A stretch of 40,735 nucleotides of DNA from Cyanophora paradoxa CCMP329. Lineage: Eukaryota > Plantae > Glaucophyta. How positions within the stretch are numbered: position 1 is the stretch's first letter; each line of letters begins with the position of its first letter. Below the pieces are notes generated by a model. That model saw nothing but the letters and a program-made list of their open reading frames with translations, was not told the origin of the DNA and made no database searches. Made by a program: the position numbers and the translations under genes. This document shows positions 1 to 34,600 of this stretch, one piece after another. The stretch is taken from positions 1 to 40,735 of the forward strand of contig QPMI01000371.1 of the NCBI GenBank assembly GCA_004431415.1, in the 5' to 3' direction.

Positions 1-758
1 GCCGCCCTCGACCATCACCGAGCGGGCGCCCCGGGCCCGCAGCCGCCCCAGAAGGTCCCCCAAGTCCACGCGCCCCTCCCCCGCCGCCCTGCACACCACC
101 ACCGACGCCCCCGCCGCCTCCAGCGCTTCCCTCCGCGCCCTCCACTCCCCCGCAGCGCCCGCCGACGGCTCTGGCCCCCGCCGTCAGGGCCCCCGCTCCG
201 ATCGGGGCCGGGCTCGGCACGAGCGCACCGACCGCGGCGAGCAGGGGCCGCCGGCACTTGGGAGAAGTGAGCAGGTTGCAGCTCAGCGGCGTGCGCAGCT
301 GCGAGTCCAGCACGACCGGCAGCGGGTTGTCGCCTGCGGGGCCGGGTTGGCGATGCGGGCGCCGGTTGAACTAGCGGCGCACCTTGCACGTGCCGAACGT
401 TGAGAGACGGGTTATCCGCAAGAAGAGTGCCTGAAGCAATTGCCGTCAGTCGAAGCTGCGTCACGTGGCTAAAGATCGGCCCGTCCCGCACCGATGCCGA
501 CCAGAATGGCGTCGTGCATGGCTCGCAGCGCGTGTGTCATGCGCATCGAGTCCGTCCCGCTCAAAATGAGCTGGGAGCCTGCGCACGCGCGAGCAGGCTG
601 AGCCAGGGCCAAGATCTAGATCGGCCGGCACCGCGCGCACCGGCCCTGGCAGAGATGCTGCCGTCCAGAGACTGCGCCCATGTCAGCGTGACGTGTGGCC
701 GCTCCGCATCCGCCGCCTCGGCGGCCCTTTGCTTCACGAAGCTGAGCACGTCGTCCAT
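1..758 (-). CDS. RIB7: RibD C-terminal-type pyrimidine reductase (RIB7-like, riboflavin biosynthesis); spliced, 3' end runs off the window
   Basis: ATG at 758. Spliced translation MDDVLSFVKQ...RPHVTLTWAQSLDGSISARA/GSQLILSGTDSMRMTHALRAMHDAILVGI/GTLLADNPSLNVRHVQ/GDNPLPVVLDSQLRTP matches the RibD_C motifs (AxSLDG, HxLRxxHDAILVGxGT, DNPxL, PxxVVLDS). Short GT-AG introns. Confidence 0.88.
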
Positions 759-984
759 TTTCGGGGCTCAGTCGTTCGAGCTCTCTTGCCCCCCCCCCCC
801 CCCGCTTTCGGGAGCAGCTGTCCTTTTCACTTCCATCGACATCCGTCAGCAAGCTAGCTGCACTGCTGCAGCAGCTGCAGCCCTTGGAGCGCTCGAAAGC
901 AACCCAGACATTCACCGCCGCCTCGGTTCTTGACGCATTGCGGCGAACCCAAAAACAGCTCGTCCGGAAGACAGCGGCGGCACG

Positions 985-3845
985 ATGAGCAAGAAGGAGA
1001 AGCTGGATATGACGCCGCAGGTGCGCGCATGCGCAATGCGTGCCTCCCGCGGCACCTGACGAGCTCTGCGTGTAGGAGATGGAGCGCTTCATGGAGTGCC
1101 TCAAGCAAGAGGAGTTCAGGAAGCTGCTCAACGACTACGCCAAGGAGATCTCCGATCCCGCTCACAAGGCGGTGTGTGCGCGTGCTGGCCGCGTCGCGTG
1201 CTCGACTGACGGCCTGCGCAGGAGTACGACGCGTACATTGAGCAGCTGGAGCGGGAGGCGAACGAGAACCCGGACAAGCGCGAACAGACGACGCTCATCA
1301 AGCCGGAGCCGGGCTTCGTGCTGAAGACGAAGAATGAGAAGACGGGGAAGAAGGTCTTCATCAACGTGTGCCACAGCTCGAAGATGGACACCGGCTCGGA
1401 GCAGAAGGTCAAGGGAGGCGCGCAGCTCAACTTCCCGTACGGCCTCGCCGGCCCTCGCGAGGCCAAGGACAACGGTGCCGGCTGTCCGCTGGCCGCCAGC
1501 CGCCCGCCTGCGCCGACGGGGGCGGCAGAGGGTGAGGTCGTGCCGGCGTGGGACGTGGTGTTCGGGACGGCGAACTACGAGCGGGCGGACGCGAACGCGC
1601 GCGTCAAGGAGCTCCTCATCGAGATGGCCCTCGAGGCCGTCGAGCGCCAGAGCGGCCACAAGCTCGCCAAGAGTGCGCCCCGCGCCCCGCGCGCCCTCCC
1701 CCGCCGCCGGCGCCGCGCCGCCCACGCCGGGGCGCCGGGCAGAGCCGAAGGTGATCAAGGGAACGTACCGGAGCGACCGGCCGGAGCCGGCCCTGCTCGC
1801 CGTCAAGAAGGAGGTCAAGGGCGGCGCCAAGAAGCCGGCGGCGGACCCCGGGCCGCCGCCCCCGCTCGAGGAGGCGCGCCCGAAGCCGGCGGCGGCGGCG
1901 GCGAAGGCGGCGCCGGTGCGGGACAAGCTGCAGGAGGAGGTCATGGCGATGCAGCGGGAGATGAAGGCGGCGGAGCGGGCCGCCAAGGGCCGCGCCCCGC
2001 AGCCGCCCCCGGCCCCCGCGGGCGGCCCCGAGCGCCCCAAGGTGGAGATCGTGGAGCGGGGCGTGATGGACGTCGGCGGGTTCCTGGAGTCGCAGGAGCG
2101 GGGCCGGGCGGCGCGGCCGCGGGAGCTGGCGGTGCGGATCTCGCTGCCGAAGAAGGCGGGGGCCGGGGACGTGGACCTGGACATCGAGGAGCGCGCCCTG
2201 ATTCTCGCCGACGCCGCCGGCCTCTACGCCCTCTCCATGCCCCTCCCCTACCCCGTCGACCCCGACGACGGCCACGCCAAGTTCGACACCAAGACGTGCC
2301 CCGCCCCGCCCCGCCCCGCCCCGCCGCCTCCGCGGGGCCCGATCCGCGCGCGGCAGCCGCGTGCTGGAGGTTGTGCTCCGCGTCCAGCCGCCCCCCAAGC
2401 CGGCGCCGGCCGCGCGGCCCCTCGTCGAGGAGATCCCCGAGGCGCGCCCCTGCCCCTCGCCCCGCCCCGCCCCGCGCAACCCGCGGCGACTGAGCGCCGC
2501 GCAGGCCGCCCCGCGCTCTCCGTGTCGCCCCCCGAGCGGGCCCCGGAGGCCGGCTCCCCAAGGGCGCCCCCGTCGCGGAGCCGGGGCGCCTGAGCCCCGA
2601 GCCGCGGGCCGGCAGGCGCCGGCCCCCGCCGGCGGCCTTCAGCGGGCGAACAGCGCGGTGCCGGGCTGGACGCAGGAGGCGGCGGCGGAGGCGGCGGCGA
2701 AGCACCCGCCGGCCCCATCGAGAGCGCGGGGATCCGTCTGGCGCGGGCCACGCAGGTGACCCCCGCGGGGAGGAGCCGGCGCCGGCGCGCGCGGAGCGGC
2801 GGCGAGGGAGCCTGAGCCCTGAGCCGGACGGGGAGGCCCCGCGGGGCCCCATCGCGACGGCGAACGGGGACCTGCCGGGCTGGAGGGCCGAGGACGCGGA
2901 GGCGGCGGCGGCGCGGCACCCGCCGGCCCCCATCGAGAGCGCGGGGATCACGCTGGCGCGGGCCACGCAGGTGACCCCGCCCGAGGGGGCGGCGGCGGCA
3001 GCGGGCCCCGAGGAGCGGCCGGCGCACAGCATGACGCAGTCTCACCTCAACGTGACGGTCCACATCGCCGCCCCCGCGGCCCCCGCCCCGGAGACCGTCC
3101 GAGCATTCTTCGCCCCCCGCAAGGTCCCCTCTCCCGCCCGGGGCGCGCGCCGGGGGCGGGGCGGGAACCGACGAGCGGGGCGCGCAGGCCGAGGTGCGGT
3201 TCGAGGCGGGGGGCCGGCGCTGGCGCCTGACCCTCGCCCTCGCCCACGACGTCCTCCCGGCCGCCTGCCGCCTCGCCCCGGCCCGCCGCCGCCCGCCGGC
3301 GCCCCGCCGCCGCCCTCCTCCTCGTCCTCCGCAAGGTGCCCGCCCCTCGCCGCCCCTCGTCCCGCGGGGCGCGAGCGAGCCGGCCGGCGGGCGTGCGCAG
3401 GCGGACGCGCACATCACGTGGGGCACGCTGGGCGCGCCCGAGGCGGGGCGTGGGAGGGGCGCCCACGGGGCCCCCGTGGTCGCCACCCTCGCCGGCTCCG
3501 CCCGCAACCCCGCCTACACCGCCCCGGCCCCGCACCCCGCCGCCCCCGCCCGGCCCTCCTCGCCCAAGCCCCCCGCCCCGCCCCCGCCTCCGCCGCTCCC
3601 GCCCGCCGCCCCCGCCTCGGCCGTCTCCTCTTCCGCCCCTGCCGCCCCGCCCCGCCCGCCCCGCCCCCGCTGCCCCTGCCGACCCAGCGCCGGGACCGGC
3701 GGGGCTGGGCGGGGCGAAGGCGGGGCCGGCGGGCAAGGGCTTCGACCCGAAGGCGGCGCTGGGGCTGCGGAGCGCCCCGGGGCCGGCGGCGGCGCCCCCG
3801 CGGCCCGTCAAGTTCACCAACACCCTCCTCACCGAGCTCGACTAG
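985..3845 (+). CDS. DNAAF2: Kintoun / dynein axonemal assembly factor 2 (PIH1 + CS domains); multi-exon
   Basis: Exon 1 985-1020 (MSKKEKLDMTPQ), intron 1021-1075, then EMERFMECLKQEEFRKLLNDYAKEISDP..EYDAYIEQLERE..IKPEPGFVLKT..KVFINVCHS (PIH1). CS domain RELAVRISLP..YALSMPLPYPVDPDDGHAKFD. C-terminus KFTNTLLTELD* resembles the kintoun FxNxLLxxLD end. The middle exons are uncertain because of likely homopolymer indels. Confidence 0.88.
2685..2978 (+). repeat. Internal ~80-nt direct repeat in DNAAF2 (copies ~2685-2763 and ~2896-2978)
   Basis: Both copies read gcggaggcggcggcg..cacccgccggcccc(c)atcgagagcgcggggatc..ctggcgcgggccacgcaggtgacccc and encode AEAAA.HPPAPIESAGI.LARATQVTP. Copy 1 lacks one C. 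Confidence 0.85.
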
Positions 3846-4326
3846 CGCCCCGCCCCGCTCGCCCCCCGCCCGGGCCCCTCCGAGCCGCTGTGTCCCCGCC
3901 CCCTTCGACCTCCCGCGGCAAGGATCGGATCTCTTCGACGGCGTCGATATCAGGTTCTCGGTCCCGTGTTGCACAAGGACAAGGGATCGGTGCGCGCTGC
4001 GTGCGGCATATGCATACAGCTGCAGCGGGAGACTACAAGGCTAAATACACATACACGTAGAAGAGACACACCGCACTCCTTATATCTGGCTATCATAGTA
4101 TCTACAATACCGGTAATACCTATCGCAAGGCGACTAGCGTGATCGCAAGATCGGGCCCGCGCGGCCACCCGATCGACATTCAAAAAAAGGATTATTAAAA
4201 TCACTGAAACTGAAGTCCATAAAACAACGTCCGGCACTTCTCAAAACTCAAGCTCAGGGTATCCTGCGTGCGGCTATAAAACACTGTGACATGGGCGGTA
4301 GAGCGAGTGACCGAAACGGAAGGGGG

Positions 4327-4349
4327 GAGAGAGAGAGAGAAAGAGAGAG
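4327..4349. repeat. (GA)n microsatellite in the convergent intergenic region
   Basis: gagagagagagagaaagagagag. Confidence 0.8.
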
Positions 4350-4414
4350 GCGTGCTCAAACTAGCCCTGAAATCGGAGGAGCAGGGGAGAGCGAGAGGGG
4401 TAGGAGTGAAAAGA

Positions 4415-7400
4415 CTACCTGCAGACTCGCGGCGGCTCCGGTCCGGCGGGGCCGGGTGCGACGGCGGGGGCCGGGGTCCAGGGGGGCTGCTGCGCGGTGT
4501 AGGGGTAGAGGTAGGCACCGCCGGGGGCGCTGACGAGGAGGGCGCCGGTGCCGGCGGGGCCCTGGAGGATGGCGAGGCCGGGGATGGGGGCCCCGGCCCC
4601 CTGGGGGCCCGGGAGGCCCCCCGGGAGGGCGAGGAGCTGGCGGTGGACGTCGGTGTGCGCCTCGAGCTGCTCCTGCCGCCGCCGCGCGTGCGCCGCGATC
4701 GCCCGCGACGTCACCGGCCCCCGCCCCGGCCCCGCCTCCCCCGGCCCACGCGGCTTGCCCCCGGCGGCGCCGGCCGGATCGCCCGCAGGCTGCTCCCCGC
4801 CTGCGGCCCACCCGCGGGGCCGCCGGGCCGGCCAGGGGCAGGGCGCCGGCGAGGGGCGCGGGGGCGGCGGCTGCAGGCGGGGGCGGCGAGCAGGGCGGGG
4901 CCGCGGGAGCGGCGTTGAGGGGCGCGGAACGAAGCGCTGCTGGCCCGCCCCGCCGCCATTGCCTGCTGCATCCACGCCGGCCCCGCCGGCCCCCCAGCCC
5001 CGCCCTCGCCCCACCACCAGCTGCACGCCCGGCGGCGCCGGCACCAGCACTCCAGGAGGCGGCGCGGCCAGCTGTGCGCCCGGCGGCGCCGGCCGCGGTA
5101 CGAGCTGCAAGCCCGGCGGGGTAGGTACCAGCTGCACACCGGGCGGCGCCGGCACCAGCTGCAGGCCCGACGGGCCGGCCAGCGCCTGCAACGGCGCCGG
5201 CGCCGGCGGCGCCCTGGGCGGAGCGGTCGGTACTGGTGCTGGCGGGGCGGAGCGGGCGGGCGGGAGCCTGGGGCGGTGGCGGGGCCGACGGGCGGGGGGC
5301 GAGCGGACGCGCTTCAGGGCGGGAGCCTCGGGGGGGCCAGCGCCGGCGCCGCGGGGGCGCCCCGGGGCACGGGTGCGTCGAAGGGCAACGGCAGCGCTGG
5401 CGGCAGCGGCGGCGCCGGCGGCAGCGGCGGGAACGATGAAGAGGTGGGGAGGCGCTTGGGCGGCCGCGGGGCGGGCGCGGGGGCGGGGCGGGGGCGGGGT
5501 GGGAGGAGGAGAGGGCGAGGGGACGGGAGGGCGGGGTCGGAGGTGAGGGGGGCGGGGCGGCGGGGGCGGGGCGGGCGGGCGTGCGGGGAGAGGCAGAGCG
5601 CATCGACGCCGCGCCGGGCGGCCGCGTTGCCCGGGTCCGAGGGCGCCGGCGAGGGCGCCGCGTGCGGCGAGAGCGCCTGCGAGGCCGCCGGCGACAGGTG
5701 CTCGAGGGAGGCCGGCGGGGAGGCCCCGGGCGACGTTCCCGAGTCGGGCGACGAGCAGCTCGGCGCCCGAGGCCCTCCGCGAAGCCCTCGAGCGCGGCGC
5801 CGCCCTCGGGCGCGGCGAGGGGCCCCAGGGGCGCCAGGGGCCGCAGGGGCCCGAGGGGCAGGGGGCCGATGGCCGGGATGGCGTCCAGCGTGGGGAGGTG
5901 CGGGAGGTGCGGCAGGGGCGCGAGGGTCGGGAGCGGGCCCAGGGCGTCCAGCGGGCCCAGGGAGCCGTCGAGCGCCCCGAACGTCTCCAGCGCCCACCGC
6001 GCCACCGCCTCCGCGTCCGGCTCGCCCTCGCCCTCCCCCGGCTCCGCCCACGACCCCTCCGGCTCCGGCGCGGGCGCATGTGGCTCGGGGGCGAGGAGCG
6101 GCGCTGGGGCCGGTGCCGGGGCCGGGGCTGGCTGGTGCTGGAGGTGGGGCGGCGGAGAGAGCTCCGGGGCGGCGAAGGAGCGCTTGCGCTTGCAGGCGGC
6201 GCTGGGGGCGGGGGCGTGGGGGAGCGGGGCGAGGGGCGGGCGGGGCGGGGCGAAGGGGCCCCAGGGGCGAGCGGCGTCCTCGGAGCCGCGGCGGCGGGAG
6301 ATGTAGAAGGAGCGCCAGGCGGCCACGATGCCCTCCACCTCGCGGTCGGCGAGCAGGCCCGCCCCCTCCGCCTCGCTCGCCAGCAGCTCCACGTACGCCC
6401 CGTCCTCGTCCTCCTCCAGCAGCGACGCCAGGCCCACGGGGCGCGCCGTCCCCGCCAGGCCCGCCGCCGCCTCCTCCACGCTCCACGCGCCCCCCGCCAC
6501 GTAGCGGCAGTAGTCGCTGAAGTACCGCACCAGCATCCGCGCTGCCGACCCGCCTCAGCCCCGGCCCCGCCCCCAGCGCGGGGGCCGGGAGGTGCCCGCA
6601 CTGAGGAAGCCGCGGAAGCCCTGCGGCTGCTTGTTGGGGAGCGGGAGGGCGCTCGGCGAGCCGGCGTACTCCATGAAGGTCGCTGCGCGGCGCGGCGCGG
6701 CGCGGCTCGACCGGCAGACGGCGGGCGCGCGGCGGGGACGGCGGCGGGCGCACTGAAAACGACGTCGCAGGCGCCCGCGCTGCTCTGTTGGGGTAGGAAC
6801 TGCCAGTCGCTGTGGCAGACCAGCCTGCGGGGCGTGAGGCCGGCCAGCGGGGCGGGCCGGGGCCGACGCACCCCAGGCTGTGCCAGGGGTTGGAGGGGTA
6901 CGGGAGACCGTGCTGGGGGGTCATGAAGGTTGTCGCCGTGACGCACGAGTCGTGGCACCAGGACTGTCCGCGGCGTCGGGGGCAGGGGCGGGGCGGGGCG
7001 GGGCAGGGCGGGCGGGGCGGACGAGATCGAGGGAGACGGAGCGGGTGCGGAGGAGTCCGGAGAAGGTGCGGTACGTGCGCTCCACCACCTGCCGCCCTCT
7101 CAGCGGCCTCGCGGCGCCCCGCGCGCCGCCGCCGCGCACCAGGAAGTCGCTCTCCAGGCCCTTCTGGAACTCGTCCAGCGCCAAGACGCTCACGCAGCCG
7201 CTGTGCCACTTGTTCTCGTGCCGTCGTAGTGCGTTGGCCAGCAGATCTGCCGCCGTGTTCAGCGGAGGGCGGCCCTAGCCGTGAGGCTCTATCCTAAAGG
7301 GTGGAGAAAGGAAAAGAAAAGATTCGAAAGCTAAAACATGGCGTAGGGATCGATGCTGCAGCGATGCTACGGCAGGCGGCGGAAGATATCCAACGTGAAA

Positions 7401-7852: not shown

Positions 7853-8070
7853 GCTGCTCGCCCGAGTGCCGGCGATCGGTGGGGACGGCCCCGACTAGCT
7901 AGGTCAGCATCCGAAGTTTTGATTCCGAACACTCGACTAGCTGCGGGAAATCCGCAGCTGCAAGCGCAGAGCGCGCCCTCCCGCTTGTCGACAGAGCGCT
8001 GTCGTCGTTTGTCGACTCTGTGGAGTCAGACTCAGAGTCAGTGACGAGTCTTGCGAGCTCGGAAATTTCG

Positions 8071-8106
8071 AAGGGGAAATCCTAAAGGAAGGGGAAATCC
8101 TAAAGG
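8071..8106. repeat. Perfect 18-nt tandem duplication (AAGGGGAAATCCTAAAGG x2) in a divergent spacer
   Basis: 8071-8088 is identical to 8089-8106. Confidence 0.9.
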
Positions 8107-8210
8107 AGGGGTAGGCCCGGATAGGGCTGTTCAGGCCAACAGCCGCACGCGCGGCAACCAACATCGACGCGCACTATGAGCTCAACCGCGCATTCGCATT
8201 GTGTCAGTCG

Positions 8211-9547: not shown

Positions 9548-9738
9548 GCCCGGCGCCCTCCCCGCCCCGCCCCCTACCGCCCCCTACCGCCCCCCGCCGC
9601 CCCGCGCGGAACTCGAAGCGGAAGAGAAAGCGGCTGCACTCGCGTAGCCGGCCCGGCGGCGGAACCGAGCGGCGACTGCCGGCTAAGGCAAGCGCACGCT
9701 TTTGACCAGAAAAAAAGTGAAAAAGGGAAGAGCGGGGA

Positions 9739-12558: not shown

Positions 12559-12658
12559 CGAGCGACGGGACTCGGCGTGTTTCTGTTGCACGGCCTCTGA
12601 GTCTCTACCCCGTTGGGCCTTGAACCCCCTTGGGTGACTGGGGGTACGGAGCACGAGC

Positions 12659-12676
12659 TTTGAAAGTTGGCGCGCC
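12659..12676 (+). promoter_or_regulatory. Candidate CHR-like (TTTGAA) plus E2F-like (TTGGCGCG) element upstream of POLD1
   Basis: TTTGAA at 12659-12664 and TTGGCGCG at 12667-12674, 65-80 nt upstream of the POLD1 ATG. Resembles the known cell-cycle elements, but the arrangement is not the canonical CDE-4nt-CHR. Confidence 0.35.
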
Positions 12677-12738
12677 GGGCCCTTCTCTCCTGCGGGCAGC
12701 TTTCTCTTGCAGGGAAGCAGTTCTAGCAGCGCAGCATA

Positions 12739-18208: not shown

Positions 18209-18442
18209 TTGTGGATTGTGCTGCTGCAAGCGCTTGTCCGCCCCGCGCTCGACGATGACTGTGGCGCCGGGCGAGGTTCTTGCGGGCGGCCAAGCAGAAT
18301 CGACAACAAGAGTGCTACGCGCTCGTCGACTCGTTGTCGAGTCGAGTTCTTAGTCCTAGCCGAGGGGGGTAGAGGAGGCGGCAGTCCAGTGCGCTGTAGC
18401 AGTCGGCAGGCGAGCCTCTGAGCCCGAAGCTCAGCACGCATC

Positions 18443-20986: not shown

Positions 20987-21024
<38 letters not shown>

Positions 21025-22807
21025 CTTGGGCGGCTCGGGCTCGGGCTCGGCGGCCGGCTCCTCGGGCTTGGTCTCGGGCTCGAGCTCCGGGGGCGCGGGG
21101 CTCATCTCCTGGCGGCGGGAGAACATGGCGTCGGCCTTGCCGCCGGCCTTGGGGTCGTCCTCGAACTCGACCTCCCCGGGGGTCTTCGTCTCGCCCTCGC
21201 CCTCGGGGGCCAGCTCGGGCTCGGGCTCGGGCTCGGCGGGCAGCGGGGCGAGCTCGACGTCGCCGGTCGGCTGCGCGGGGGCGTCCTCGTCGATGCGCGC
21301 GGCGGCCTGGAGCTCCTCCTCGGCGAAGGTGCTGTCCTCGTCGCCCTCCCCGACGATGTCCGCCAGCTGGCCCTCCTCCGGCGGCGGCGGAAGGTCCCCC
21401 ACGTTCACCCCGCCCTCGCTCTGCGGCCTCCTCTCCCCGCCCGCCCCGCCCCGCGCCGCCCCCGCCGGGGCCGTCATCGGCGCCGCGTAGGGGTCGTAGA
21501 AGCGCGAGCCGAACTCGTCGGACTCGCGCATGGCGCCGACGGGGGCCGACGCCGGCGGCTGCCCGTACTCGTCGTACCCGCCGTCCTCCCGGTACTTCCG
21601 CAGGAACCGCGCGTGCGCCGCCGTGCTGCCCGCCCCGTCAGCCACGCCGGCGGCGGCTCGGGGCGGCGCGGGGCACCTCTTCGGGCGGGGGAACTGGGAG
21701 ATCATCTTGAGGTACTCCTCCGTCTGGGCCCGGTCGTTCTCCCAGTCGGCGTGGTTGTAGTAGGGCGGGCGGGCCTGGATGCGGCGCAGCAGGGCCTGGT
21801 TCTCCTGCGTGATCCGCATGAGCTCCCGCCTCCGGTGGTCCTTGTTCAGGCTCCGCGGCTCCACCGCGTAGCCGGCGTAGATCGTCTGCTCGCTGATGTC
21901 TGCGCCCCCGCCCCGCGTCACGGGCGAAAGGAAGGGAGGAGGAATCCGCGGCAAGCGGACGCACAGTTGTCGATCACAGGGACCTGGTGGCGGTTGAGCC
22001 GCAGGCCCGGCTTGTACTCCGTGGAGCGCATGCGCTCCCGCGGCGACGTCTGCATGATCCGGCTCATCTTCTCCAGCAGGATTGTGTTCTCCCGCTCAAT
22101 CTCCAGGAAGCGCTCTGCGCGAGGAGGCTCAATGACCGCGCGTGCCTTAGCGGTTCGGCCCCCCGGACCTTCTTCGAGCTGCGCCCGCTTCAGATTTCTC
22201 CGCAGATGGCTCATGCCTACTGTCCTGGGCTGGCTCGTGTCCATGTGCGGCGACGCATTTGTTCGCGACGTCGGCTTCATGTTCCTGAGAGGCCGGGGGT
22301 CAGCGCCCCGTCAGACACAAGGAAAGGGAGGGATGTGCACCGTATACGCTCCCTGTGCATGTCCTGAGAAAGGCGACATAGTCAGCGAACCGCAGCGTGG
22401 CGCCTTGGCGACCGCTCTAAGAACAGCTCCCAAAGATAGCGGCCGCACGGCACCCAACGGGGGGGACGGCTTCTCTGAGCGGCACTGATAGACACGCCTG
22501 ACCCCCTGCAGCCTAACAAGAGAGCCGGCCGCCCCGCCAGTTGTCACTAGCTAAAGGAGCCAGCGCGCTGGGAGCTAGAACGTGCCACGGGCGGCGCGGC
22601 GGACCTGCAGGTGCCGCTGCCATCTCTCGTCGCAGATCTTGTTTGGTACTGCGCAGGGAGAGGCGCCAGGTCAGCCGCGGAGAGCGGGCCGCGATCCGAC
22701 CAGCCGACCAGAACGGTCGGGTGTCGGAAGGGGGCGGCTAGGGGGCCACAAGATGCAAATTCTCGCAGCTGGAGGCAGCAGAACCCACCTGGTATCGCTC
22801 GGTACAT
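19768..22807 (-). CDS. CFAP97/hemingway (KIAA1430)-domain ciliary protein with IQ motif and Glu/Pro-rich tail
   Basis: Spliced MYRAIP/VPNKICDERWQRHLQ/DMHRERIR/NMKPT..HLRRNLKRAQLEE/ERFLEIERENTILLEKMSRI..SLNKDHRRRELMRITQENQALLRRIQARPPYYNHADWENDR. IQ motif AAATKIQALARGHLTRK; (EP)n repeats. Confidence 0.82.
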
Positions 22808-23038
22808 CGCTGCTGCTGTTCTTCTTCCACTCCCAAAATACGGGTCTGTGGGGGGGTTTATCGTCAGCCGGGTACAGATTGAGAGAGGTTCACGCTTGTT
22901 CGAGCGCTCGTGCGAGTCCAGCCGATGAGTCCAAATCGACAATAAGAAGCTACAGCGCACCGCAGCCCGGCGCCAGCGCCAGCGCCTCGAGAAGCTGCTC
23001 TGGTTCGGCCCGCCACGGCCAGCCGCTCTGCTGCCGTA

Positions 23039-23817: not shown

Positions 23818-23950
23818 CCCCGCCCGAATGGCGTGCGCTGCGACGTGCACCGGCCGCGTGCGCGCGCGTGCAGCACCAGCTGAAGTAGGCAGAAGATCTG
23901 GCGAAACACGGCGAGACCATACAGATAGCACTAGTTGGGCAGCAGGAGAG

Positions 23951-24020
23951 CAGTTTCTGTAGCTATAGTTTAGGTAGCTAGACTCGATGCAGGTGTCAGT
24001 TTCTGTAGCTGTAGTCTAGG
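23951..24020. repeat. Imperfect 24-nt direct repeat in the convergent intergenic region
   Basis: CAGTTTCTGTAGCTATAGTTTAGG (23951-23974) vs CAGTTTCTGTAGCTGTAGTCTAGG (23997-24020). Confidence 0.8.
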
Positions 24021-24070
24021 ATATCTCCCAGGACGGGGCGGCGAGCGGAGGGAAGAAGGCGGCTCGGGGG

Positions 24071-26144: not shown

Positions 26145-26366
26145 ATTTGGGAGGCGGTTCAGCGGCGATTGCAGAGGCCTAGAGGGGCTGCGGCTTGGCG
26201 GGTAGTGCGAAGTTCGGGCAAGAGCTGGGGGATACGCGATTTCGGGAGGCAAACGGCAAAGATGCCGCGCATCACCGGCGCCGATTCGCACGCGTAGTAT
26301 TCATTTTAGGTTTAGTCCCTTCACTCTTGCAATCCCCAGCTCGGCGTGCGACGAGCGGCGGTGGCC

Positions 26367-28824
26367 ATGTCGCGCCCGAAAACCCCAGAGCGCGGCACCC
26401 AGCCACCGATGCTGGTTCTGGCCGGCGTCGCGGATGAAGCCCTCCGGGAGCAGTACATGCAGTTCCTGACGCTGGGAGGCGTCCAGTTCGTTCCGACTGC
26501 TGACGGCTTCTTCGTGGCCACCGTGCGGGTGCTGCTGGATGGAGAGAGCCCGCCTATGACGGCGCGACGACCGGAGCGGCTGGAGTCGCAGCCCGGAAGC
26601 CGCACGGCCTCCCCACACCATCATCACGGCGTCCCCTACGTCGAGGACCCTGCCGCGTTCTTCCAGAGCATACTCCGAGCCTATCCAGACGCGGAGCGCG
26701 ATCTCCGGTCGTCCAGCAGCCGCGCCCCGTCTACCAGGCCGCACTCCCCAAGCCACGCCAGCGCGCACAGCGCCGCCACCAGCGGCCGCTTGCCCGCGGC
26801 GCCGCGGCAGGGCGCCTCGCGGCCCTCGCCGCCGCGCCGCACCGCCGAGCCGCGGGCGTGCGTCGACCAGGCGGACATGGCGGCGCTGCACCAGTTCCCG
26901 AGCTTCTGCGCGGCGGCGGAGATCGGGCGGAGCGGGCCGCCGCCGGCGAGCAAGCGGCGCTCGCTCACCTGGCTCCTCCGCCTCATCGACGAGATCTACG
27001 ACGGTGCCCGCCGCCGCCCCGCGCGCCGCGCGCGCCGAGGCGGGGCGCCGCGCAGAGCGGATCGCGGTGGAGAAGATCGCGATGGCGCTGGAGGCGGACG
27101 AGTCGTACCAGCTGTGGCACGACCCGCACGAGGCGGGGCGCCTCGCCGAGCTCCGCTCCGCCTCCTTCCCCGCCTTCGTGCACCACGTCCTCAAGAAGAA
27201 GTTCGGGCTGCGGAGCCTGGTGGAGCAGGCGGCGGTGGACGTGGCGGCGACGGCGGACGCGGCGAGCGCGAGCCACCCGGCGGTGCGCGTCTTCGCCGGC
27301 TTCCTCTCGGAGCTCTTCGACCGGGAGGCCCTGGAGTTCTTCCTCGCCGCCCGCCGCTCCGCCCTCGTCGCCCTCCGCCGCTCCGCCCCGCCCCGCGACA
27401 CCGCCCTCAAGGCCCCCCGCGTCCCCGAGGAGATCGCCCGCGGCGTCGTCAGGACCGTCCTCGGCGGCACCTCCCTCGAGGCGGCGGCGCAGGCGGCGGT
27501 GCGGGTGCACCATGCGCGGCACCGGCGCCGCTTCGACTCGTACGTCATGGAGCTCCACGTCTTCCTCGACCTCCTCCTCGACCTCTTCATCCGGTCCGCC
27601 CCCGCCCCAGGCCCCGCCCCCGCCCCCGCCCCGCCTCACGCCGCGCCCGCCCCGCAGCGCCCAGTTCGAGGCGCGGTCGCCCCCCGCGCCCCGCCCCGCC
27701 TCTCCCGCCGGGCGGCTGACGTTGGGCCAGATGCGGGCGAGCCGGCCGGGGATCGCGCAGGAGACGATGGACCCGCGGGCCGGCGGGGCTCGCGCGGGGG
27801 CCCCGCCTCGCCGCCCCGCCACCCCTCGAGGCCGTCCGCGAGGACGACGCCGAGGAGGCCCCGCCCCGGCCCCCGCCCCGCCCCGGCCCCGGCCCCGGGC
27901 CGCCCGCAGCCCCCGCCGCCCCGCCCCGCCCCGCCCTCGGGCCCCCGGCCCGCGTCCCCGTCACCGCCCCTCCCGCCCCGGCACCCGCGCCCGTCCCCAG
28001 CTCCGCCCCCGCCCCGCCCCCGCCCCTGTCCCCGCCCCAGCCCCGTCACCGCACCTGGCCGCGGAGAGCGGGCAGCTCCGTGGCCGGCGGCGGCCGCCGC
28101 GGGGCCCGCCGGCTCGCCCGGGGCCTCGCGGAGCACGCACCCCGACTCGCCAGGCGTCGAGGGCCGCGCCGCCACCCGCGCCCCCGCCCCGCCAGCCCAT
28201 GCGCCGCTGCCGACCCCGGCCTCGCCCCACGCGGAGTCGCCGCCTCGCGTGGCGGGGGCGGGGGCGGGGCGGGGCGGACGGGAGCCCGCCGCGGACGCAG
28301 CCTTCAACGCCCCCGCGGCCGGCGGCGCGCCCCGCCCCCGCCTCCGACCAGTCGCCCCTCGACCAGTCGCCCCCCGCCCGCCTCGGCGTCTACCCGGTGA
28401 GCGCCGAGCTTTATTCTCGACCCTCGCCTCGCCCCCGGGGCCTGACGGGGCGGGGCCAGGCGACGCCGGTGGACGCGCCGCTGACGCCGCTGCGGGGGCC
28501 CCAGGGACGCCCCCGCCGGCGGCCCCGTCGCCGCCGAGCCCCAGCGCCGTCTGGCACCTCCGGGGCGGGGCGGCCCCCGGGAGCGCCCGCAAGTCGCCGC
28601 GGCGGGGGCGGGCGGGCCAGGGGGACGAGAGCGGGGGGTCGTACGATGGGGACGGGGAGCGGGCGGGGCCCGGGGGCGAGGGGCGGCCGCCCTCGGAGGT
28701 GGAGGAGGGGGAGATCCTCTCGGGCTCCGAGCAGGGGACCCCCGGCGGGGCGCCCGCCCCCTGGCACCCCCAGCGCCTCGCCTCCTCCGGCCCCTTCTTC
28801 GTCCGCTCCTACGCCCAGAGCTGA
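26367..28824 (+). CDS. Uncharacterised protein; central helical domain resembling the TSNAXIP1-type region of ciliary proteins, Pro-rich tail
   Basis: MSRPKTPERG..SLTWLLRLIDEIYD/ERIAVEK..SFPAFVHHVLKKKFGLRSLVEQAAVDV..HPAVRVFAGFLSELFDREALEFFL; ends PFFVRSYAQS*. The family resemblance is by eye only. Confidence 0.62.
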
Positions 28825-28973
28825 GCCCCGTCCCCCCGCCCCCGCCGCACCCCCGCCCCGCCGTGCTTGCGCGCATGCGTACTGGCTGCTTCTGAATGAA
28901 TGAAAGAAAGAAGAGCCCTGGAGGGAGAGCGAGGGGCACAGGCTCGCGGGGGGAGGGGGCCCGGGCGGGGGCC

Positions 28974-31392
28974 TCAGAGGGGCCCCGTGGAGATGCCGCC
29001 GCCGGTGGCGCAGCGGACGGAGACGTTGCCCGCGGGGTCGGCGACGGCGGGGCGGAAGGGCCCCGCCGCCTCGCTCTCCTCCCGCAGCAGGCCCTCGAGC
29101 GCATGAAAGGCCTCCCGCCGCCGCTCCTCCGCCCCCTTCTCGGGGGCCCCGCCCCCGGGGCGGGCGCCCCAGCCCTCGGCCGTCTCCCCGCCGAGGTAGC
29201 CCGAGCCCGGGGGGAGGGCGGCGAAGGAGAGGGAGCCGGCGGCGGCCCCGAAGGAGGCGCTCATGCCGGCGGCGTAGGCATAGCGGGCGAGGGCGCGCTG
29301 CTGCCGCGCCTCCGCCCGCACCGCCGCCGCCTGCTGCTTCGTCGCGATCCGCTGCTCGATCCGCCACCTGCCCGCCCCCGCCCCGGCCTCGGCGGGGGGC
29401 CGCGAGGAACGGGAGGGCGGGCGCGTGGGGGCGCACCCGGGGATGCGCCCGTCGGGGAGCGGGGCGGGGAGGGCGGGGGCCTGCTGCTCCCGCTCCTTGG
29501 CGATCTGGCGGAGGGACTTGGTCGGCACGCCGCCCCCGATCACGTGCGCCGGGCTCCGGCTCCGCGTCACGTCGAGCGCCCCCTCCGGGTGGTACGCTGC
29601 CGCGCCCTCCGTCAGCGGGCCGGGCGGGGGTGGGGGCTGGCGGGGCGCCGGCGGGGGGCGGACCGGGCCCCGGGGAGACGCTGGCGCCGAACTCGAGGCC
29701 GAGGCGCTGCGCGGTGGCCATCTTGACGCCCTTGGAGCGGGGCTTCACGAGGTACTCGCTGGGGCGGTACTTGGGGCCGGGCCCCGCGTCGTCGAGGCGG
29801 CCCTGCGTGAGCCACGCGCTCCGCTTCCAGAGCTCGTCGCCGTGGAGGGTGAAGGCGGGGCGGCTCCTCCCCACCGCCCGCACCCCCTCGCTCACGTCCA
29901 GCCCGGGGCCCGGCGAGGCCGCCCCGGGGTACGTCCCCGCGGGGTCCCGGCGGGCGGCGCGGCCGATGACGGTGCGGGGCGGGGAGCGGTGGACGGCCTC
30001 CTGCGGGGGGCCCCGGATGTCGAGCGCCGCCGGCCCCGGCGAGCACGCGATGTCCCGCTTCGTGTACACCGCGTGCCCGAAGCGCGTGGCGGGGCCGGTG
30101 GGGTTGACGGGGGGGCTGAGGACCTCGGCGGGGGGCCGGGAGGCGCGGGCGAAGGAGACGGGGCGGGCGGCGGGGATGCGGTTGGAGAGGACGGTGTTGG
30201 CGCGGTCCGGGTCGTACTGCGGGCCCGGCACGCCCTCGCGGTGCACCGAGGGGCGCAGGCCCGTGCCGAAGGAGGGGGCGTAGTGGGAGCGCCGCGTGAT
30301 GTCCACCGAGGGCAGGTACTGCGGCCCGGGGCTCTCCGTCGGCAGCTCCGGGAACTGCAGCGGGTACCGGTGGTGCGTCGACCACTCCTGCCGGCCGCAG
30401 GCGTCAGGCGGCGGGGGAGGGCGGGGCGGGCGGGGCGGGACGGGGGCGGACGGGGCGGTGGGGGTAGCGCTCGATGGGGGGGTGGACGAGGGCGTCGTAG
30501 GCGGCCTCCGAAGAGGAGCGCGGGCGCCGCGAGGACTGGCCCCCGGCTCCCGCCGAGGGCCCCGAGCGATGCGACGTCGACCGCAGCGAGCGCTGCGAGC
30601 GCTGCGAGGCGTCCACCCCCAGCGCCCCGCTGCCTCGCCCCGCCTCCTCCCCCTCCGCACCAGCGCCCGACTCCTCGATCAGGTAGCTCGCGAGCTCTGC
30701 GCGGCCCGTCAGCGGGCGGCGCCGGCGGTCGCGCGGCGGGGCGCACCGGCGATCGGCCCGTGCGCTCCCAGGCCCGGCTCGGACTGCGCCCGCCCGAGCT
30801 GCCGCGGTTCCGACGTTGACGCCGCCGCCGCCGTCGCTGGCGCCGCCGCTGGCGCCGTCTCCGACGTGGATGCCTCCGCCGGCGGGGCCGGGGCCGGGGC
30901 CGGGGCCGGGGCCGGGGCCGGGGCTGGGGGCGGGAGAGAGGGCGCGAGGTCGAGCTGCTGCGACGAGTCCGGCGGGGTGGGGTCCGCGAAGTGCGCGTGG
31001 GCGTGATCCAGCCGCCGCTGCGACTCCGGCGCCCCCTGCGCCTCCTCCTCCGCCTCGTTCCCCGGCACAAAGAGCACCACAGCACTCCGCGCTGTCCTCG
31101 CCGTCTCCTCGCGGGCGCTCGCCAGCTGCTGCGTGGCATCGGGCTGCGCTGCTGTCGCCTCCACCGCCTCCTCCCTGAGCTGAGCCCCGTCGTCGTCTTC
31201 CTCCGCTTCAGAATCCGCGCCCGCGCTCCTTCTGCTTGGGGACGCGGCCTCGAAGTCATCTTCGTACGCCATGGACTTGCTAGCATCCACGCCATCCGGG
31301 TCCGCCTCAGCCTCACCAGCCTCAGCGTCCCGCTCCGCGGACGGCTGCTGCTCCGCCTCCTCCTCGCGCGGGGCTTCGTCCGGCTCGCTCAT
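28974..31392 (-). CDS. SHIPPO/sperm-tail PG-rich repeat (ODF3-like) protein with acidic N-terminus
   Basis: ATG at 31392 (MSEPDEAP). Repeated SPGPQY, VPGPQYD, SPGPAA, SPGPG, GPGPKY units, most followed by PSFG/PVSF/PAFT-type motifs typical of SHIPPO repeats. Confidence 0.75.
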
Positions 31393-31614
31393 TACTCTGC
31401 TGTGCCAGCGCCGCTGACTGTAGCTGCCGCTTGCTGGCTTCACGCGTTGGCTCAAATGGGAGGTCCGCGCTCTAATTTGCTCACTCGGTGCGTTTGTCTA
31501 CCCCGGTCGTCTAAAGAGCCTCTACCCCCTTCACGTCTGAGCGAGATGCTTATGTTGCGAGGCCTGGAACGATCCAGGCGATAGCGCCCGAGCCGGGAGC
31601 ACGACGAATCAGAG

Positions 31615-34600
31615 ATGGCGCGGCCCCCGCCAGCCGCGGCGGTGGTGCTACTTTTCCTCGTGTTCGGCGCTGTTGTGGTCGAAGTCACGGAGGCGATGTC
31701 GATCCGAGAGCGCATACGATTGCGGTGCGTTGTTCGGTCTGCCGCTAGCGCTCCGGGGCGCTCCCGCTGTCATCATCGAGCTTTGGCCTGCCGCCGCCCT
31801 CGCTGTCATCTTCGGGCTTCGCTGACCGGTTCTGCAGAGAGGAGGTGCGGCGGATGTTTTATCACGGCTACGAAGGCTACCTGAAGTACGCCTTCCCTGC
31901 GGACGAGCTCGCGCCGGTCTCCTGCAGCGGTGCGTGCGCCCGGGCGCGTCAGCGCTTGCCGAGGGCGCCCCCGGCTCACCCCGCGGGCGGCAGGCATCAA
32001 CAACTTCGGCGGCTACGCGCTGACGCTGATCGACGCGCTGGACACGCTGATGGCGCGTCCGGGGCCGCCCCTGCAATCCCCGCGCGCGGGGGGGGGTCGA
32101 GTCGCGCGCCCGGGCCGCTGAGCGGGGCGCACGGGCGGGGCGCAGGTGCTGGGCAACGCCACGGAGTTCGGGCGGGCGGTGGGGGTCGTGCTGAGCCGCT
32201 TCCACGACTTTGACATCGACGCAAACGTCTCGGTCTTCGAGACGAATATCCGGATCCTGGGCGGCCTCCTCTCCTCCCACCTCCTCGCCATCCGCTACGT
32301 TCCCGTGAGCCCGTCGCCCCTCCTCCTCCTCCCCCCCCCCCCCCCCCCCTCCCCGCTTGAGGCGGAGGGGGGCGGCAGGGGTACGGGGGCGGGCTGCTGG
32401 AGCTGGCGCGGGACCTGGGCCACCGGCTGCTGTGGGCCTTCCAGACGCCGACCCTCATCCCCTACGGCACCGTCAACCTCAGGCGCCCCGCCCCGGCCCC
32501 CGGCCCCGCGAGGCGTCTGACCCGCCCGGGCAGGTACGGGGTGCCGCCTGGGGAGACCCCCGTGGCCTCCCTCGCCGGCGCCGGCACCTTCGCCCTCGGT
32601 GCCCCCGCGTCTCTCCCGCGGCCCGCGGGGGCCCCGCTGACGCGCCGGCGCGCGGCAGAGTTCGGGCTGCTCTCGCGGCTCACGGGGGACCCCCGCTTCG
32701 AGGCGGCCGCCCGGGGCGCCCTCCGCGGCCTCTTCCGCCGCCGCTCCCCGCTCGGCCTCTTCGGCATGCACATCGACGCCCTCAGCGGTCCGCCCCTGCT
32801 CTGCATCGCCGCGCCCCGCCCCCGCCGCGCCCGCCCGACGGGCCGGGCAGGGGAGTGGACGCAGAAGGAGGCGGGGATCGGGGCGGGGGCGGACTCGTTC
32901 TACGAGTACCTCTACAAGGGGTACCTGCTCTTCGAGGACCGGGAGTACCTGTGGATGTTCGGCGAGGCGTACGCGGCGGTGCTGCGCCACCTCAAGAAGG
33001 ACGCCTGGTACGTCGACGCCAACATGTACTCCGGCCAGATCGTCTGGTGCCCCGCCCCGCCCGCCCCGCTCCGCATCTTTGCTGAAGGCGGGCTGGGGCG
33101 CGGGGGCGCAGGCCGATCTTCAACAGCCTGCAGGCGTTCTGGCCGGGGCTGCAGGCGCTGTACGGGGACGTCTCGGCGGCGGCGGAGACGCACTACGCCT
33201 TCCACTGGGTCTGGCGCAAGTACATCGGCATCCCCGAGGGCTGGAACCTCCACTCCCAGCAGGCCCAGGCCGGCCAGAAGCGCTACCCGCTGCGCCCCGA
33301 GCTCGCCGAGTCGGCGTTCTACCTGCACGCGGCGACGGGGCGGGGCCGGTACCTGTACGTGGGGCGGGACATGGTGCGGAGCCTGCAGCACTTCACGCGG
33401 ACGCCGTGCGGGCACGCGGAGGTGGACGACGTGGAGACGGGGGCCCTGGCCGACGCCCAGGCCTCCTTCTTCCTCTCCGAGACCTGCAAGGCCCGCCCCC
33501 CCCGCCCCGCCCCGCCCCGCCCTCCTGCCCCCAGCTGGGGCTGACCCCCCCGCAGTACCTGTACCTGCTGTTCGACCCGGAGCCCGGGACGCTGGGGAAG
33601 CGGGGCGTCGTCTTCACGACGGAGGGTCACCTCGTGCCCCTCGACTACAACGCCACCATCCCCTACACCTGGACCGCCTGGGAGACCCAGCCCCAGCCCG
33701 GGCCCCCGGCTCATTTTGAGGACGGGGCCCTCCCCGCCTCGGCCCCGGCCGCGGGCCCCCACAACGAAACGGCGCCGGCCGTCGACCCGCTCACGGGCAG
33801 GCCAGCGGTGGCGGGGGCGGGCGGGGCAGGGCGTCGGCGGCGGCGGGCGGCGCGGGTGTCGGGGCTGAGGCGGCAGCCGGTGGAGGTGGACTTTGCGCGG
33901 CAGTGCCCCGCCCTGCCGCCCCACGAGCGGCCCCTCTACAGCCGCTCCGACGCCCCGCCCGCCCTCCACTCCGAGCCCCCCGCCGTTGCAGGCAGCGGAG
34001 GCGGCAGCAGCGGCAGAGGCAGCAGCGACGATGGCAGCAGCGGCGGAGGCAGCAGCGGCGGTGGTGGGGTCGGCATCGGCAGCGATGCCAGCAACGGCGG
34101 TGGCAGAAGCAGCAGCAGCAGCAGCAGCGGGGATTTTTTTGAAGGGGGCGGGGGCGAGTGGGAGGAGGTGGAGGTGGATCTCGAGGACGGGGGGTGGGGC
34201 CCCGGGGATGAGGAGGAGGAGGGGAGGAGGCGGGGCTGGACTGGGAGCTGGAGGCGAGCGTCGAGTCCGACGCCCTCGTGCGCGCCCCGCGCCCGGCCCG
34301 CTGCCGCCGCCTTCGCCGCGTCCTCCGACGCCGGCGGGGCGCGGGGGCGGCAGGTGGTGGCGGCGGAGGTGGACGCGCTGGTGGCCGCGCAGGAGCGGCG
34401 CGGGCGCGACGAGCGCGTCTTCCAGCACGTCGCCGCCGCCGCCCTCAACGCCGCCGCCGCCAACGCCAAGGGCTCCGTCCGCCCCGCGCCCCCCTTGGCT
34501 CCTCTCGGCCCGCGCTGAGGCCGGCCGCGCGGGGCCGCGCGCGCAGGTGCAAATCGTGGTGCAGGGACCCGACGGGCGCGTCTCCCAGATCACCGTCCCC

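What the first reader, a model, noticed from the sequence alone, without database searches (positions are those of the whole stretch)
758..31615. Divergent spacers have a nearly fixed length (~222-234 nt between start codons)
Seen: the nt between opposed ATGs are 226 (758/985), 234 (18208/18443), 231 (22807/23039), 222 (26144/26367) and 222 (31392/31615). The two outliers are 180 (12558/12739; 246 if POLD1 starts at Met 12805) and 358 (7852/8211). Convergent gaps vary widely, from ~150 to ~970 nt. The spacers are visibly lower in GC than gene bodies. Inference: a geometrically constrained bidirectional promoter, such as one nucleosome-free region between +1 nucleosomes with very short 5' UTRs.
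Basis: partly seen in the sequence, partly recalled or inferred. Interest (0 to 1): 0.8.

Follow-up and report, generated by a model that had tools for sequence, protein, structure and literature searches.

The report
Near-constant-length shared promoters between head-to-head genes
In this 40-kb stretch of a very GC-rich alga (other agents of this scan call it Cyanophora paradoxa), all 15 genes sit in back-to-back pairs, and in five of the seven pairs the DNA between the two start codons is 222-234 letters long, which suggests a length-constrained two-way promoter but needs a genome-wide count and RNA start mapping to prove.

Summary
All 14 ATGs are at the stated coordinates, and the gaps are 226, 358, 180, 234, 231, 222 and 222 nt. 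These are all seven head-to-head junctions of the window, so nothing was cherry-picked. Five of seven values within 12 nt has P of about 1e-4 to 3e-3 under broad length distributions.

What I added:
- The 15 genes alternate strictly in orientation (7 divergent and 7 convergent junctions, no tandem pair).
- The spacers are not copies of each other, but they share short motifs, TCGACAA (central) and TCTACCCC.
- Sense-strand A>T skew and ATG depletion reach only about 50-75 nt upstream of each ATG; the middle of the spacer is strand-symmetric.
- The micro-insertion "scar" patterns in every convergent gap are absent from the divergent spacers (1 event against 12-19 expected).

Best reading: these are compact bidirectional promoters whose length is protected from indels.

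Not shown: that nucleosomes set the length, or that the 5'UTRs are very short. The low-GC trough is about 1 kb wide and is not bounded by the ATGs. One start (22807) may open only a tiny first exon or a uORF.

No RNA data or genome-wide test could be obtained. Unchecked notes on other windows of this genome report head-to-head spacers of 316 and 34 bp, so the length is not universal.

The parts
759..984 (.). Divergent spacer 1, 226 nt. Lies between a RIB7-like pyrimidine reductase gene (ATG 758, -) and a PIH1-domain gene (ATG 985, +). Holds a C15 run at 789-803 and ATCGACA at 835-841.
   Evidence: Residues 19-43 of exon 1 align to residues 19-43 and 20-44 of PDB reductases 9l1f and 9l1h.
7853..8210 (.). 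Divergent spacer 2, 358 nt (long outlier). Lies between an unknown gene (ATG 7852, -) and a 2OG-dioxygenase-like gene (ATG 8211, +). Holds an exact 18-nt tandem duplication at 8070-8105, two TCGACAA sites and one CCTACCCC site. Both genes have a nearby sense upstream ATG (58 and 35 nt).
12559..12738 (.). Divergent spacer 3, 180 nt (short outlier). Holds TCTACCCC at 12604-12611 and an E2F-like TTGGCGCG at 12667-12674.
18209..18442 (.). Divergent spacer 4, 234 nt. Lies between RPC11 (ATG 18208, -) and an ENT-domain gene (ATG 18443, +). A near-central inverted repeat, GAATCGACAACAAG / CTCGTTGTCGAGTC, sits at 18297-18343. TCTACCCC is at 18366-18373 (-).
   Evidence: Both starts are fixed by homology: Pfam profile position 1 falls on residue 1 of RPC11, and ENT profile position 8 falls on residue 8.
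22808..23038 (.). Divergent spacer 5, 231 nt. Lies between a CFAP97/IQ gene (first ATG 22807, -; this start is uncertain) and a small unknown gene (ATG 23039, +). Holds AATCGACAATAAGA at 22934-22947.
26145..26366 (.). Divergent spacer 6, 222 nt, between two genes with no recognisable family (ATG 26144 on -, ATG 26367 on +). Neither shared motif is present.
   Evidence: GC3 periodicity in frame with ATG 26367 is seen from 26281 to 26640.
31393..31614 (.). Divergent spacer 7, 222 nt. Lies between an acidic unknown gene (ATG 31392, -) and a GH47 mannosidase-like gene (ATG 31615, +) with a hydrophobic N-terminus. Two TCTACCCC sites are at 31497-31504 and 31521-31528.
   Evidence: The codon score is +14.9 immediately after ATG 31392, and the coding call ends at that ATG.
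7985..8015 (-). Two TCGACAA sites (7985-7991 and 8009-8015), part of a direct repeat CG(C/T)TTGTCGAC. They lie 43 and 19 nt from the centre of spacer 2.
18297..18343 (.). Two TCGACAA sites in inverted orientation (18300-18306 on +, 18334-18340 on -), 22 and 11 nt from the centre of spacer 4.
22789..22807 (-). Possible very short first exon of the CFAP97/IQ gene: ATG plus 16 nt, followed by the donor CAG|GTGGGT.
   Evidence: sequence reading. No RNA evidence.
22278..22288 (-). Strong splice acceptor (two CTGAC branch-like sites, a pyrimidine tract, then CAG) ending at 22286. ATG 22280 lies 5 nt downstream, just before the CFAP97 domain.
   Evidence: Pfam Hmw_CFAP97 profile positions 7-68 fall on residues 11-90 of ORF 21957-22289(-).

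Best explanation
[quoted passage not shown] In this region the genome is built entirely from such pairs: promoter-to-promoter, then tail-to-tail.

Each spacer appears to have three parts. An A>T-skewed, ATG-poor leader-like stretch of about 50-75 nt lies next to each start codon. Between them is a strand-symmetric core of roughly 80-125 nt that carries short shared elements (TCGACAA near the centre, TCTACCCC).

The total first-ATG to first-ATG length has a preferred value near 225 nt. It is kept there by purifying selection against insertions and deletions. The same small insertions accumulate freely in the convergent (3'-3') gaps, which is why those gaps vary 6-fold while most divergent spacers vary by only 12 nt.

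Shown: the lengths, the gene alternation, the skew pattern, the motif enrichment and the exclusion of insertion patterns.

Inferred: that transcription starts about 50-75 nt from each ATG, that selection acts on length as such, and that a single nucleosome-depleted region or the geometry of two back-to-back initiation complexes is the ruler.
For: - Lengths and ATGs.
- All head-to-head junctions are included, and the 15 genes alternate strictly. Random orientation would give this with P = 2^-14.
- Clustering has P of 1e-4 to 3e-3 under broad nulls.
- Starts fixed or supported by homology: RPC11 and ENT, the reductase and the dioxygenase domain. A GH47 domain lies downstream of a hydrophobic N-terminus.
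- In-frame codon scores beat the other frames after 13 of 14 ATGs.
- Only 1 sense-strand ATG lies within 50 nt upstream of the 14 starts, against about 8 expected from composition (my arithmetic).
- AT skew is +0.33, +0.17 and +0.13 in the 0-25, 25-50 and 50-75 nt bins and about 0 from 75 to 175 nt. In each gene's own half of the spacer, A = 372 against T = 272 (P = 9e-5).
- TCGACAA: 8 sites in the window against 1.35 expected. Five of them lie in the spacers, which make up 4% of the window, and all five are within 45 nt of a spacer centre.
- TCTACCCC: 4 of 5 window sites lie in spacers.
- The spacers are not homologous to each other.
- X-X'-X and X-C-X'-G-X insertion patterns: 34 merged events in 3,045 nt of convergent gaps, with every gap holding at least one. 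The 1,673 nt of divergent spacers hold 1 event, against 12-19 expected (P <= 7e-5).
Against: - There are only seven pairs from one window, and two of them (180 and 358 nt) do not fit.
- Unchecked notes on other windows of the same genome mention a 316-bp head-to-head spacer (eL24/Rlp24) and one of 34 bp.
- No transcription start, RNA or chromatin data could be obtained.
- Five starts have only weak support from codon scores and none from homology (12558, 12739, 22807, 26144, 26367). 22807 may be a uORF or a 6-codon exon.
- Splice-acceptor-like sites just upstream of ATG 8211 and ATG 12739 leave room for 5'UTR introns. These would change the inferred architecture (sequence reading).
- The absence of insertion scars shows constraint on the spacer, but not specifically on its length.
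- The motifs were found post hoc in 1.7 kb of sequence.
Confidence: 0.5

Rival explanations
1. This is an ordinary compact bidirectional promoter and the clustering is a small-sample coincidence. Genome-wide, head-to-head spacers would have a moderately narrow but unremarkable distribution (for example median about 230-250 nt, SD 30-60). The five near-identical values in this window would be luck, helped by the post hoc choice of '5 of 7'.
For: - With SD 15-30 the pattern arises in 2-20% of samples.
- Two of the seven values are far off.
- Other windows are reported to hold 316-bp and 34-bp head-to-head spacers (unchecked).
Against: - With the sample's own SD (55), or any broad distribution, P is at most 3e-3.
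- The exclusion of insertion patterns shows that these spacers really are constrained.
Confidence: 0.27
2. Pile-up at a floor. There is no preferred length, only a minimum functional size for two core promoters plus leaders. A deletion bias or a selective premium on compactness pushes most pairs against that minimum, and rarer longer spacers form a tail.
For: - The values are right-skewed: 222, 222, 226, 231, 234, then 358.
- A floor of 215 with an exponential tail of scale 15 reproduces the clustering in half of the simulations.
Against: - The 180-nt spacer lies well below the supposed floor. ATG 12739 is the first sense ATG in that spacer.
- The region is not otherwise under compaction: convergent gaps reach 970 nt and are filled with small insertions.
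- A floor of 200 or less with a tail of scale 40 gives the pattern in only 6% of samples.
Confidence: 0.13
3. The ATG-to-ATG measure is partly an artefact of gene models read by eye. Several true translation starts or first exons lie elsewhere (5'UTR introns, uORFs, non-coding first exons), so the measured lengths do not describe promoter geometry.
For: - ATG 22807 is followed by a splice donor after 19 nt, and the CFAP97 domain begins after ATG 22280, just behind a strong acceptor.
- Codon support is weak for five starts.
- The genome paper reports 9.2 introns per gene and says its gene models need curation (PMC6704402).
Against: - Randomly mis-called starts would scatter the lengths, not tighten them to within 12 nt.
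- 13 of the 14 ATGs follow one objective rule, the most upstream in-frame ATG of the first ORF.
- Four starts are supported by homology to varying degrees.
- ATGs are depleted in the 50 nt upstream of the starts.
Confidence: 0.1

Closest known systems
[quoted passage not shown] Trinklein et al. 2004; the definition is also given in PMC3082894, seen)
   Same: Two protein-coding genes lie on opposite strands and share a short upstream region. The partner genes have no obvious functional link. The TSS-to-TSS spacing inferred here (about 80-125 nt) is in the range described for divergent start-site pairs.
   Different: - The mammalian definition sets only an upper bound (<1 kb); I recall a broad peak of start-site separations, not a window about 12 nt wide.
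- They involve roughly a tenth of genes, not every gene in a row.
- The regularity here is seen between start codons, which chromatin does not read directly.
Yeast divergent gene pairs sharing one nucleosome-depleted region (own knowledge, e.g. Xu et al. 2009; related papers were listed but not read)
   Same: The proposed mechanism is the same: one open region flanked by two +1 nucleosomes drives both genes.
   Different: Yeast divergent intergenic lengths are broad (hundreds of nt), and tandem gene pairs are common. No chromatin data exist here to show a single depleted region.
Start-to-start intergenic regions in very compact genomes, e.g. Paramecium (PMC8997361)
   Same: The intergenic length is comparable to nucleosome-scale features, and genes with adjacent starts are treated as sharing bidirectional promoters.
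   Different: In Paramecium, start-start spacers are reported as a graded range that tends to be longer than start-end spacers, with no fixed size. The present genome is about 100 Mb with many introns and is not globally compact (PMC6704402).
Published description of the Cyanophora paradoxa genome (PMC6704402)
   Same: It reports densely packed genes 'often oriented end-to-end', a mean intergenic distance of 770 bp, overlapping 3'UTRs and many short introns. This matches the tail-to-tail half of the pattern seen here.
   Different: It says nothing about head-to-head spacing, strict alternation or spacer length, and UTRs were not predicted.

Membership tests
Bidirectional (shared) Pol II promoter of a head-to-head gene pair | Two genes on opposite strands with adjacent 5' ends | tested here: met
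   The codon-model strand blocks alternate - + seven times. Strands are confirmed by Pfam domains for PIH1_CS, DIOX_N, DNA_pol_B, RPC11, ENT, CFAP97 and GH47.
Bidirectional (shared) Pol II promoter of a head-to-head gene pair | Transcription start sites less than 1 kb apart | tested here: inconclusive
   The ATG-to-ATG distance is 180-358 nt. The start sites are therefore less than 360 nt apart unless the transcripts overlap or first exons lie beyond the partner gene.
Bidirectional (shared) Pol II promoter of a head-to-head gene pair | Both genes are actually transcribed from the shared region, often co-expressed | not testable with these tools
   No MNase, ATAC or 6mA data were on hand. Sequence composition does not delimit such a region, because the GC trough is about 1 kb wide.
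   The A>T skew and ATG depletion suggest leaders of about 50-75 nt, not very short ones. This is indirect evidence.
Duplicated promoter cassette (equal length through common descent) | Sequence similarity between the spacers along their whole length | tested here: not met
   All-against-all blastn gives only matches of 8-26 nt. The best is 26 nt at 85% between spacers 4 and 5.

The most novel reading that the evidence does not exclude
In this glaucophyte, nuclear genes are organised genome-wide as head-to-head pairs around a promoter module of quantised length, about 225 nt from first AUG to first AUG with an SD of a few nt. The length is held by stabilising selection even though an active micro-insertion process inflates all other non-coding DNA. 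This would imply uniform leader lengths and a fixed-geometry two-way initiation unit (one nucleosome-free region or two back-to-back pre-initiation complexes) acting as a molecular ruler. I know of no eukaryote for which this has been described.
Probability: 0.25. Interest if true: 0.75.

Novelty: new variant of a known kind. Interest (0 to 1): 0.55.

Why it matters
A sharp genome-wide mode near 225 nt would be an unusually clean natural case of a promoter whose length, rather than its sequence, is under selection. It would give a direct handle on what sets the size of a bidirectional initiation unit.

It would also have practical uses in a genome whose published gene models are acknowledged to need curation. 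The spacing could serve as a rule for finding true start codons and first exons, and as a ready-made compact two-gene promoter for engineering glaucophytes.

The strict alternation of gene orientation, and the contrast between scar-free promoters and scar-filled 3' gaps, are independent observations that deserve a genome-wide count.

Tried and rejected
- **RNA evidence.** I did not try again, so read laying was never used. No place was named as human-like.
- **Walking along the genome for more head-to-head pairs.** This organism's own proteins are not in the protein collection. There was no self-hit for RPC11, and the searches for the CFAP97/IQ exon and the 450-aa ORF at 26367 were blank. The exact-product look-ups were also blank.
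- **Cross-species test of spacer length.** A metagenome scan with the closest RPC11 relative gave no hit above 68% identity, so no glaucophyte locus was found.
- **Spacers as duplicated cassettes.** Rejected.
- **GGGGTAGA (the reverse of TCTACCCC) as the splice donor of a 5'UTR intron.** Rejected. GTAGAG occurs 0 times on the sense strand and 9 times on the antisense strand of the gene bodies. The genome's biased donor is GTGCGC, at 52 against 31.
- **Alternative starts to repair the outliers.** The sense upstream ATGs in spacer 2 (35 and 58 nt) would give a gap of 265 nt, and the one at 8176 is out of frame with the dioxygenase domain. For the polymerase gene, Met 12805 would give 246 nt. A PDB sequence search of its N-terminus gave nothing usable.
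- **Other blanks.** There is no helical-phase rule in the lengths. There are no tRNA or Rfam hits in the window. Inverted and direct repeats within the spacers were unremarkable apart from those listed.
- **Literature.** Searches found no description of fixed head-to-head spacing in Cyanophora or other algae.
- **Spliced models.** They were searched exon by exon, by reference only.
Full report
**What the window is**

The window is 40,735 nt and 74.6% GC, with no N. Frame-specific GC periodicity changes frame every few hundred bases, so the genes are rich in introns. Earlier agents of this scan name the genome Cyanophora paradoxa. I did not verify this. It is compatible with two things:
- The RPC11 ORF matches an MMETSP transcript product at 97 of 109 aligned residues.
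- The published genome description reports many short introns and densely packed genes 'often oriented end-to-end' (PMC6704402).

**Checking the observation**

All 14 start codons exist where stated, and the gaps are 226, 358, 180, 234, 231, 222 and 222 nt. Each ATG is the most upstream in-frame ATG behind an in-frame stop. The exception is 12558(-), whose only upstream alternative would overlap the partner's ATG.

I trained a codon log-odds model on the window. It gives clean strand blocks in the order - + - + - + - + - + - + - + -:
- 1-758 (-)
- 985-3845 (+)
- 4415-7852 (-)
- 8211-9547 (+)
- 9739-12558 (-)
- 12739-17200 (+)
- 17828-18208 (-)
- 18443 to about 19700 (+)
- 19768-22807 (-)
- 23039 to about 23900 (+)
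- 24071-26144 (-)
- 26367-28824 (+)
- 28974-31392 (-)
- 31615-35140 (+)
- 36111 to the window end (-)

Pfam domains confirm strand and identity for seven genes: PIH1_CS, DIOX_N, family-B DNA polymerase, RPC11, ENT, CFAP97 plus IQ, and GH47.

Fifteen genes with 14 junctions and no tandem pair has probability 2^-14 under random orientation.

**Is the clustering more than chance?**

The smallest range holding five of the seven lengths is 12 nt. Simulation gives:
- 1e-4 or less for uniform distributions over 100-500 or 100-1000
- 1.6e-3 for a uniform over the observed range
- 3e-3 for a normal with the sample SD
- 0.02 for SD 30
- 0.2 for SD 15

Allowing a few-fold for the post hoc choice of 'five', broad distributions are rejected. 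The real distribution must be narrow or piled up. A floor at 215 with a short tail reproduces the pattern easily. However, the 180-nt spacer lies below any such floor.

**How good are the starts?**

Well supported:
- RPC11: Pfam profile position 1 falls on residue 1, and the N-terminus MLFCPTCAN is identical to that of a 109-aa relative.
- ENT: profile position 8 falls on residue 8.

Reasonable:
- The reductase at 758: residues 19-43 align at the same offset to residues 19-43 of PDB 9l1f, though at E = 0.075.
- The dioxygenase at 8211: the domain starts at residue 27.
- The GH47 gene at 31615: it has a hydrophobic N-terminus.
- 31392: strong coding signal begins right at the ATG.
- 985 and 23039: short first exons that end in the genome's favoured donor GTGCGC.

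Weak: 12558, 12739, 26144 and 26367.

Doubtful: 22807.
- Nineteen nt after that ATG comes CAG|GTGGGT.
- About 500 nt further on, a textbook acceptor (two CTGAC sites, a pyrimidine tract, then CAG) ends at 22286.
- An ATG at 22280 follows, and then the CFAP97 domain.
- If the two splice sites are joined directly, ATG 22807 would open an 8-codon uORF whose stop overlaps ATG 22280.
- Either way, the donor implies that transcription of this gene begins in or near the spacer.

Taken together:
- Only one sense-strand ATG lies within 50 nt upstream of the 14 starts, against about eight expected from composition.
- Four genes have no sense ATG anywhere in their spacer.
- Mis-called starts would scatter the lengths, not tighten them.

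**Anatomy of the spacers**

- They are not copies of one another. All-against-all blastn gives only 8-26-nt matches.
- Read in each gene's sense direction, A exceeds T only in the 75 nt next to the ATG. The skew is +0.33, +0.17 and +0.13 per 25-nt bin. The stretch from 75 to 175 nt is strand-symmetric.
- This suggests leaders of roughly 50-75 nt on each side of an untranscribed core of about 80-125 nt. That is an inference, not a measurement.
- Two short words are concentrated in the spacers, which make up 4% of the window.
  - TCGACAA has 8 sites against 1.35 expected. Five are in spacers 2, 4 and 5, all within 45 nt of the spacer centre, and in spacer 4 they form a near-central inverted repeat. 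A 26-nt version, AATCGACAAYAAGA..., is shared by spacers 4 and 5.
  - TCTACCCC has five sites, four of them in spacers 3, 4 and 7.
- I tested and rejected the idea that the complement of TCTACCCC, GGGGTAGA, is a splice donor.
- Spacer 6 has neither motif. These motifs were found post hoc.

**An independent sign of constraint**

Other agents had noted that non-coding DNA of this genome is full of tiny insertions of the form X-revcomp(X)-X or X-C-revcomp(X)-G-X. I counted these patterns in my window.
- After merging neighbours, the seven convergent gaps hold 34 events in 3,045 nt. Every gap has at least one.
- The seven divergent spacers hold one event in 1,673 nt, which is what shuffled sequence gives.
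- At the convergent rate, 12-19 events were expected (P <= 7e-5, even without the largest gap).

The insertion process that makes convergent gaps range from 149 to 970 nt therefore leaves no trace in the head-to-head spacers. This fits purifying selection on the promoters, including their length. It does not by itself isolate length as the selected trait.

- The low-GC zone is not the spacer. GC is 62% in the spacers, 65% in the first 200 nt of the genes, 71% at 500 nt, 78% at 1 kb and 81% at 1.5-2 kb. This is a V-shaped gradient about 1 kb wide on each side, so composition does not outline a 225-nt nucleosome-free region.
- Very short 5'UTRs are not favoured by the skew and ATG data.
- Nothing here bears on nucleosomes.

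**The outliers**

- Spacer 2 (358 nt) holds an exact 18-nt tandem duplication and sense upstream ATGs close to both genes. No alternative start brings it to about 225 nt.
- Spacer 3 (180 nt) is the polymerase promoter and carries E2F-like sites at 12667 and 12772. Using Met 12805 would give 246 nt, but 12739 is the first sense ATG.
- Unchecked notes on other windows mention head-to-head spacers of 316 bp (eL24/Rlp24) and 34 bp.
- The length is a preference at best, not a law.

**What could not be done**

There is no RNA, start-site or expression evidence.
- The genome's own proteins are absent from the searchable collections, so I could not walk to further loci.
- No glaucophyte relative turned up in metagenomes.
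- The decisive genome-wide histogram therefore remains to be made.
- Spliced models were only searched exon by exon, by reference.

**Verdict**

It is strengthened by two regularities found here: strict orientation alternation, and scar-free promoters against scar-filled 3' gaps. The most likely reading is a compact bidirectional promoter module with a preferred length near 225 nt. The nucleosome-ruler mechanism is plausible but untested. I found no published description of such fixed spacing, in Cyanophora or elsewhere.

Noticed in passing
window 1-40735: All 15 genes alternate strictly in orientation: 7 head-to-head and 7 tail-to-tail junctions, with no tandem pair. Random orientation would give this with P = 2^-14. 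The genome paper only says genes are 'often oriented end-to-end'.
   Followed up: partly
window, all 14 genes measured from their ATGs: There is a steady 5'-to-3' rise in GC along the genes: 62% in the promoter, 65% in the first 200 nt, 71% at 500 nt, 78% at 1 kb and 81% at 1.5-2 kb. Each head-to-head promoter therefore sits at the bottom of a V-shaped GC profile about 2 kb wide.
   Followed up: partly
convergent gaps 3846-4414, 9548-9738, 17201-17827, about 19400-19767, about 23900-24070, 28825-28973 and 35141-36110: Every tail-to-tail gap holds micro-palindromic insertion patterns (X-revcomp(X)-X and X-C-revcomp(X)-G-X), 34 merged events in 3 kb. The 970-nt gap at 35141-36110 is densest and also has a short tandem array of the 8-nt unit GGCCTCAG around 35506-35550. 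The head-to-head spacers lack these patterns.
   Followed up: yes
window 22278-22807 (-): In the CFAP97/IQ gene, the first ATG (22807) is followed after 19 nt by the donor CAG|GTGGGT. A strong acceptor ends at 22286, 5 nt before ATG 22280 and the CFAP97 domain. Direct splicing of the two would make an 8-codon uORF whose stop overlaps the main ATG (ATGA).
   Followed up: partly
window 17828-18208 (-): The RPC11 gene has a 51-nt in-frame intron with the donor GAG|GTGCGC. This is shown by a 17-residue insertion relative to a 109-aa relative that matches at 97 of its 109 residues. GTGCGC is also the donor of the first introns at 1021 and 23126, and it is the most sense-biased GT hexamer in the gene bodies (52 against 31).
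   Followed up: partly
window 12667-12674 (+) and 12772-12779 (-): E2F-like sites (TTGGCGCG and TTCGCGCC) flank the start codon of the family-B DNA polymerase gene, as expected for an S-phase gene. The pattern is otherwise under-represented in the window (9 sites against 23.5 expected).
   Followed up: no
window 8070-8105: An exact 18-nt tandem duplication (GAAGGGGAAATCCTAAAG, two copies) lies inside the longest head-to-head spacer.
   Followed up: no
window 789-803: A run of 15 C lies in spacer 1, 31-45 nt from the reductase ATG. G or C runs of 5-8 nt also occur in spacers 3, 4 and 5.
   Followed up: no
window 8196-8210 and 12696-12712 (+): Splice-acceptor-like sites lie just upstream of two start codons: ttgtgtcag sits 3 nt before ATG 8211, and ctttctcttgcag sits 26 nt before ATG 12739. 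These may be 5'UTR introns or pyrimidine-rich promoter elements.
   Followed up: no
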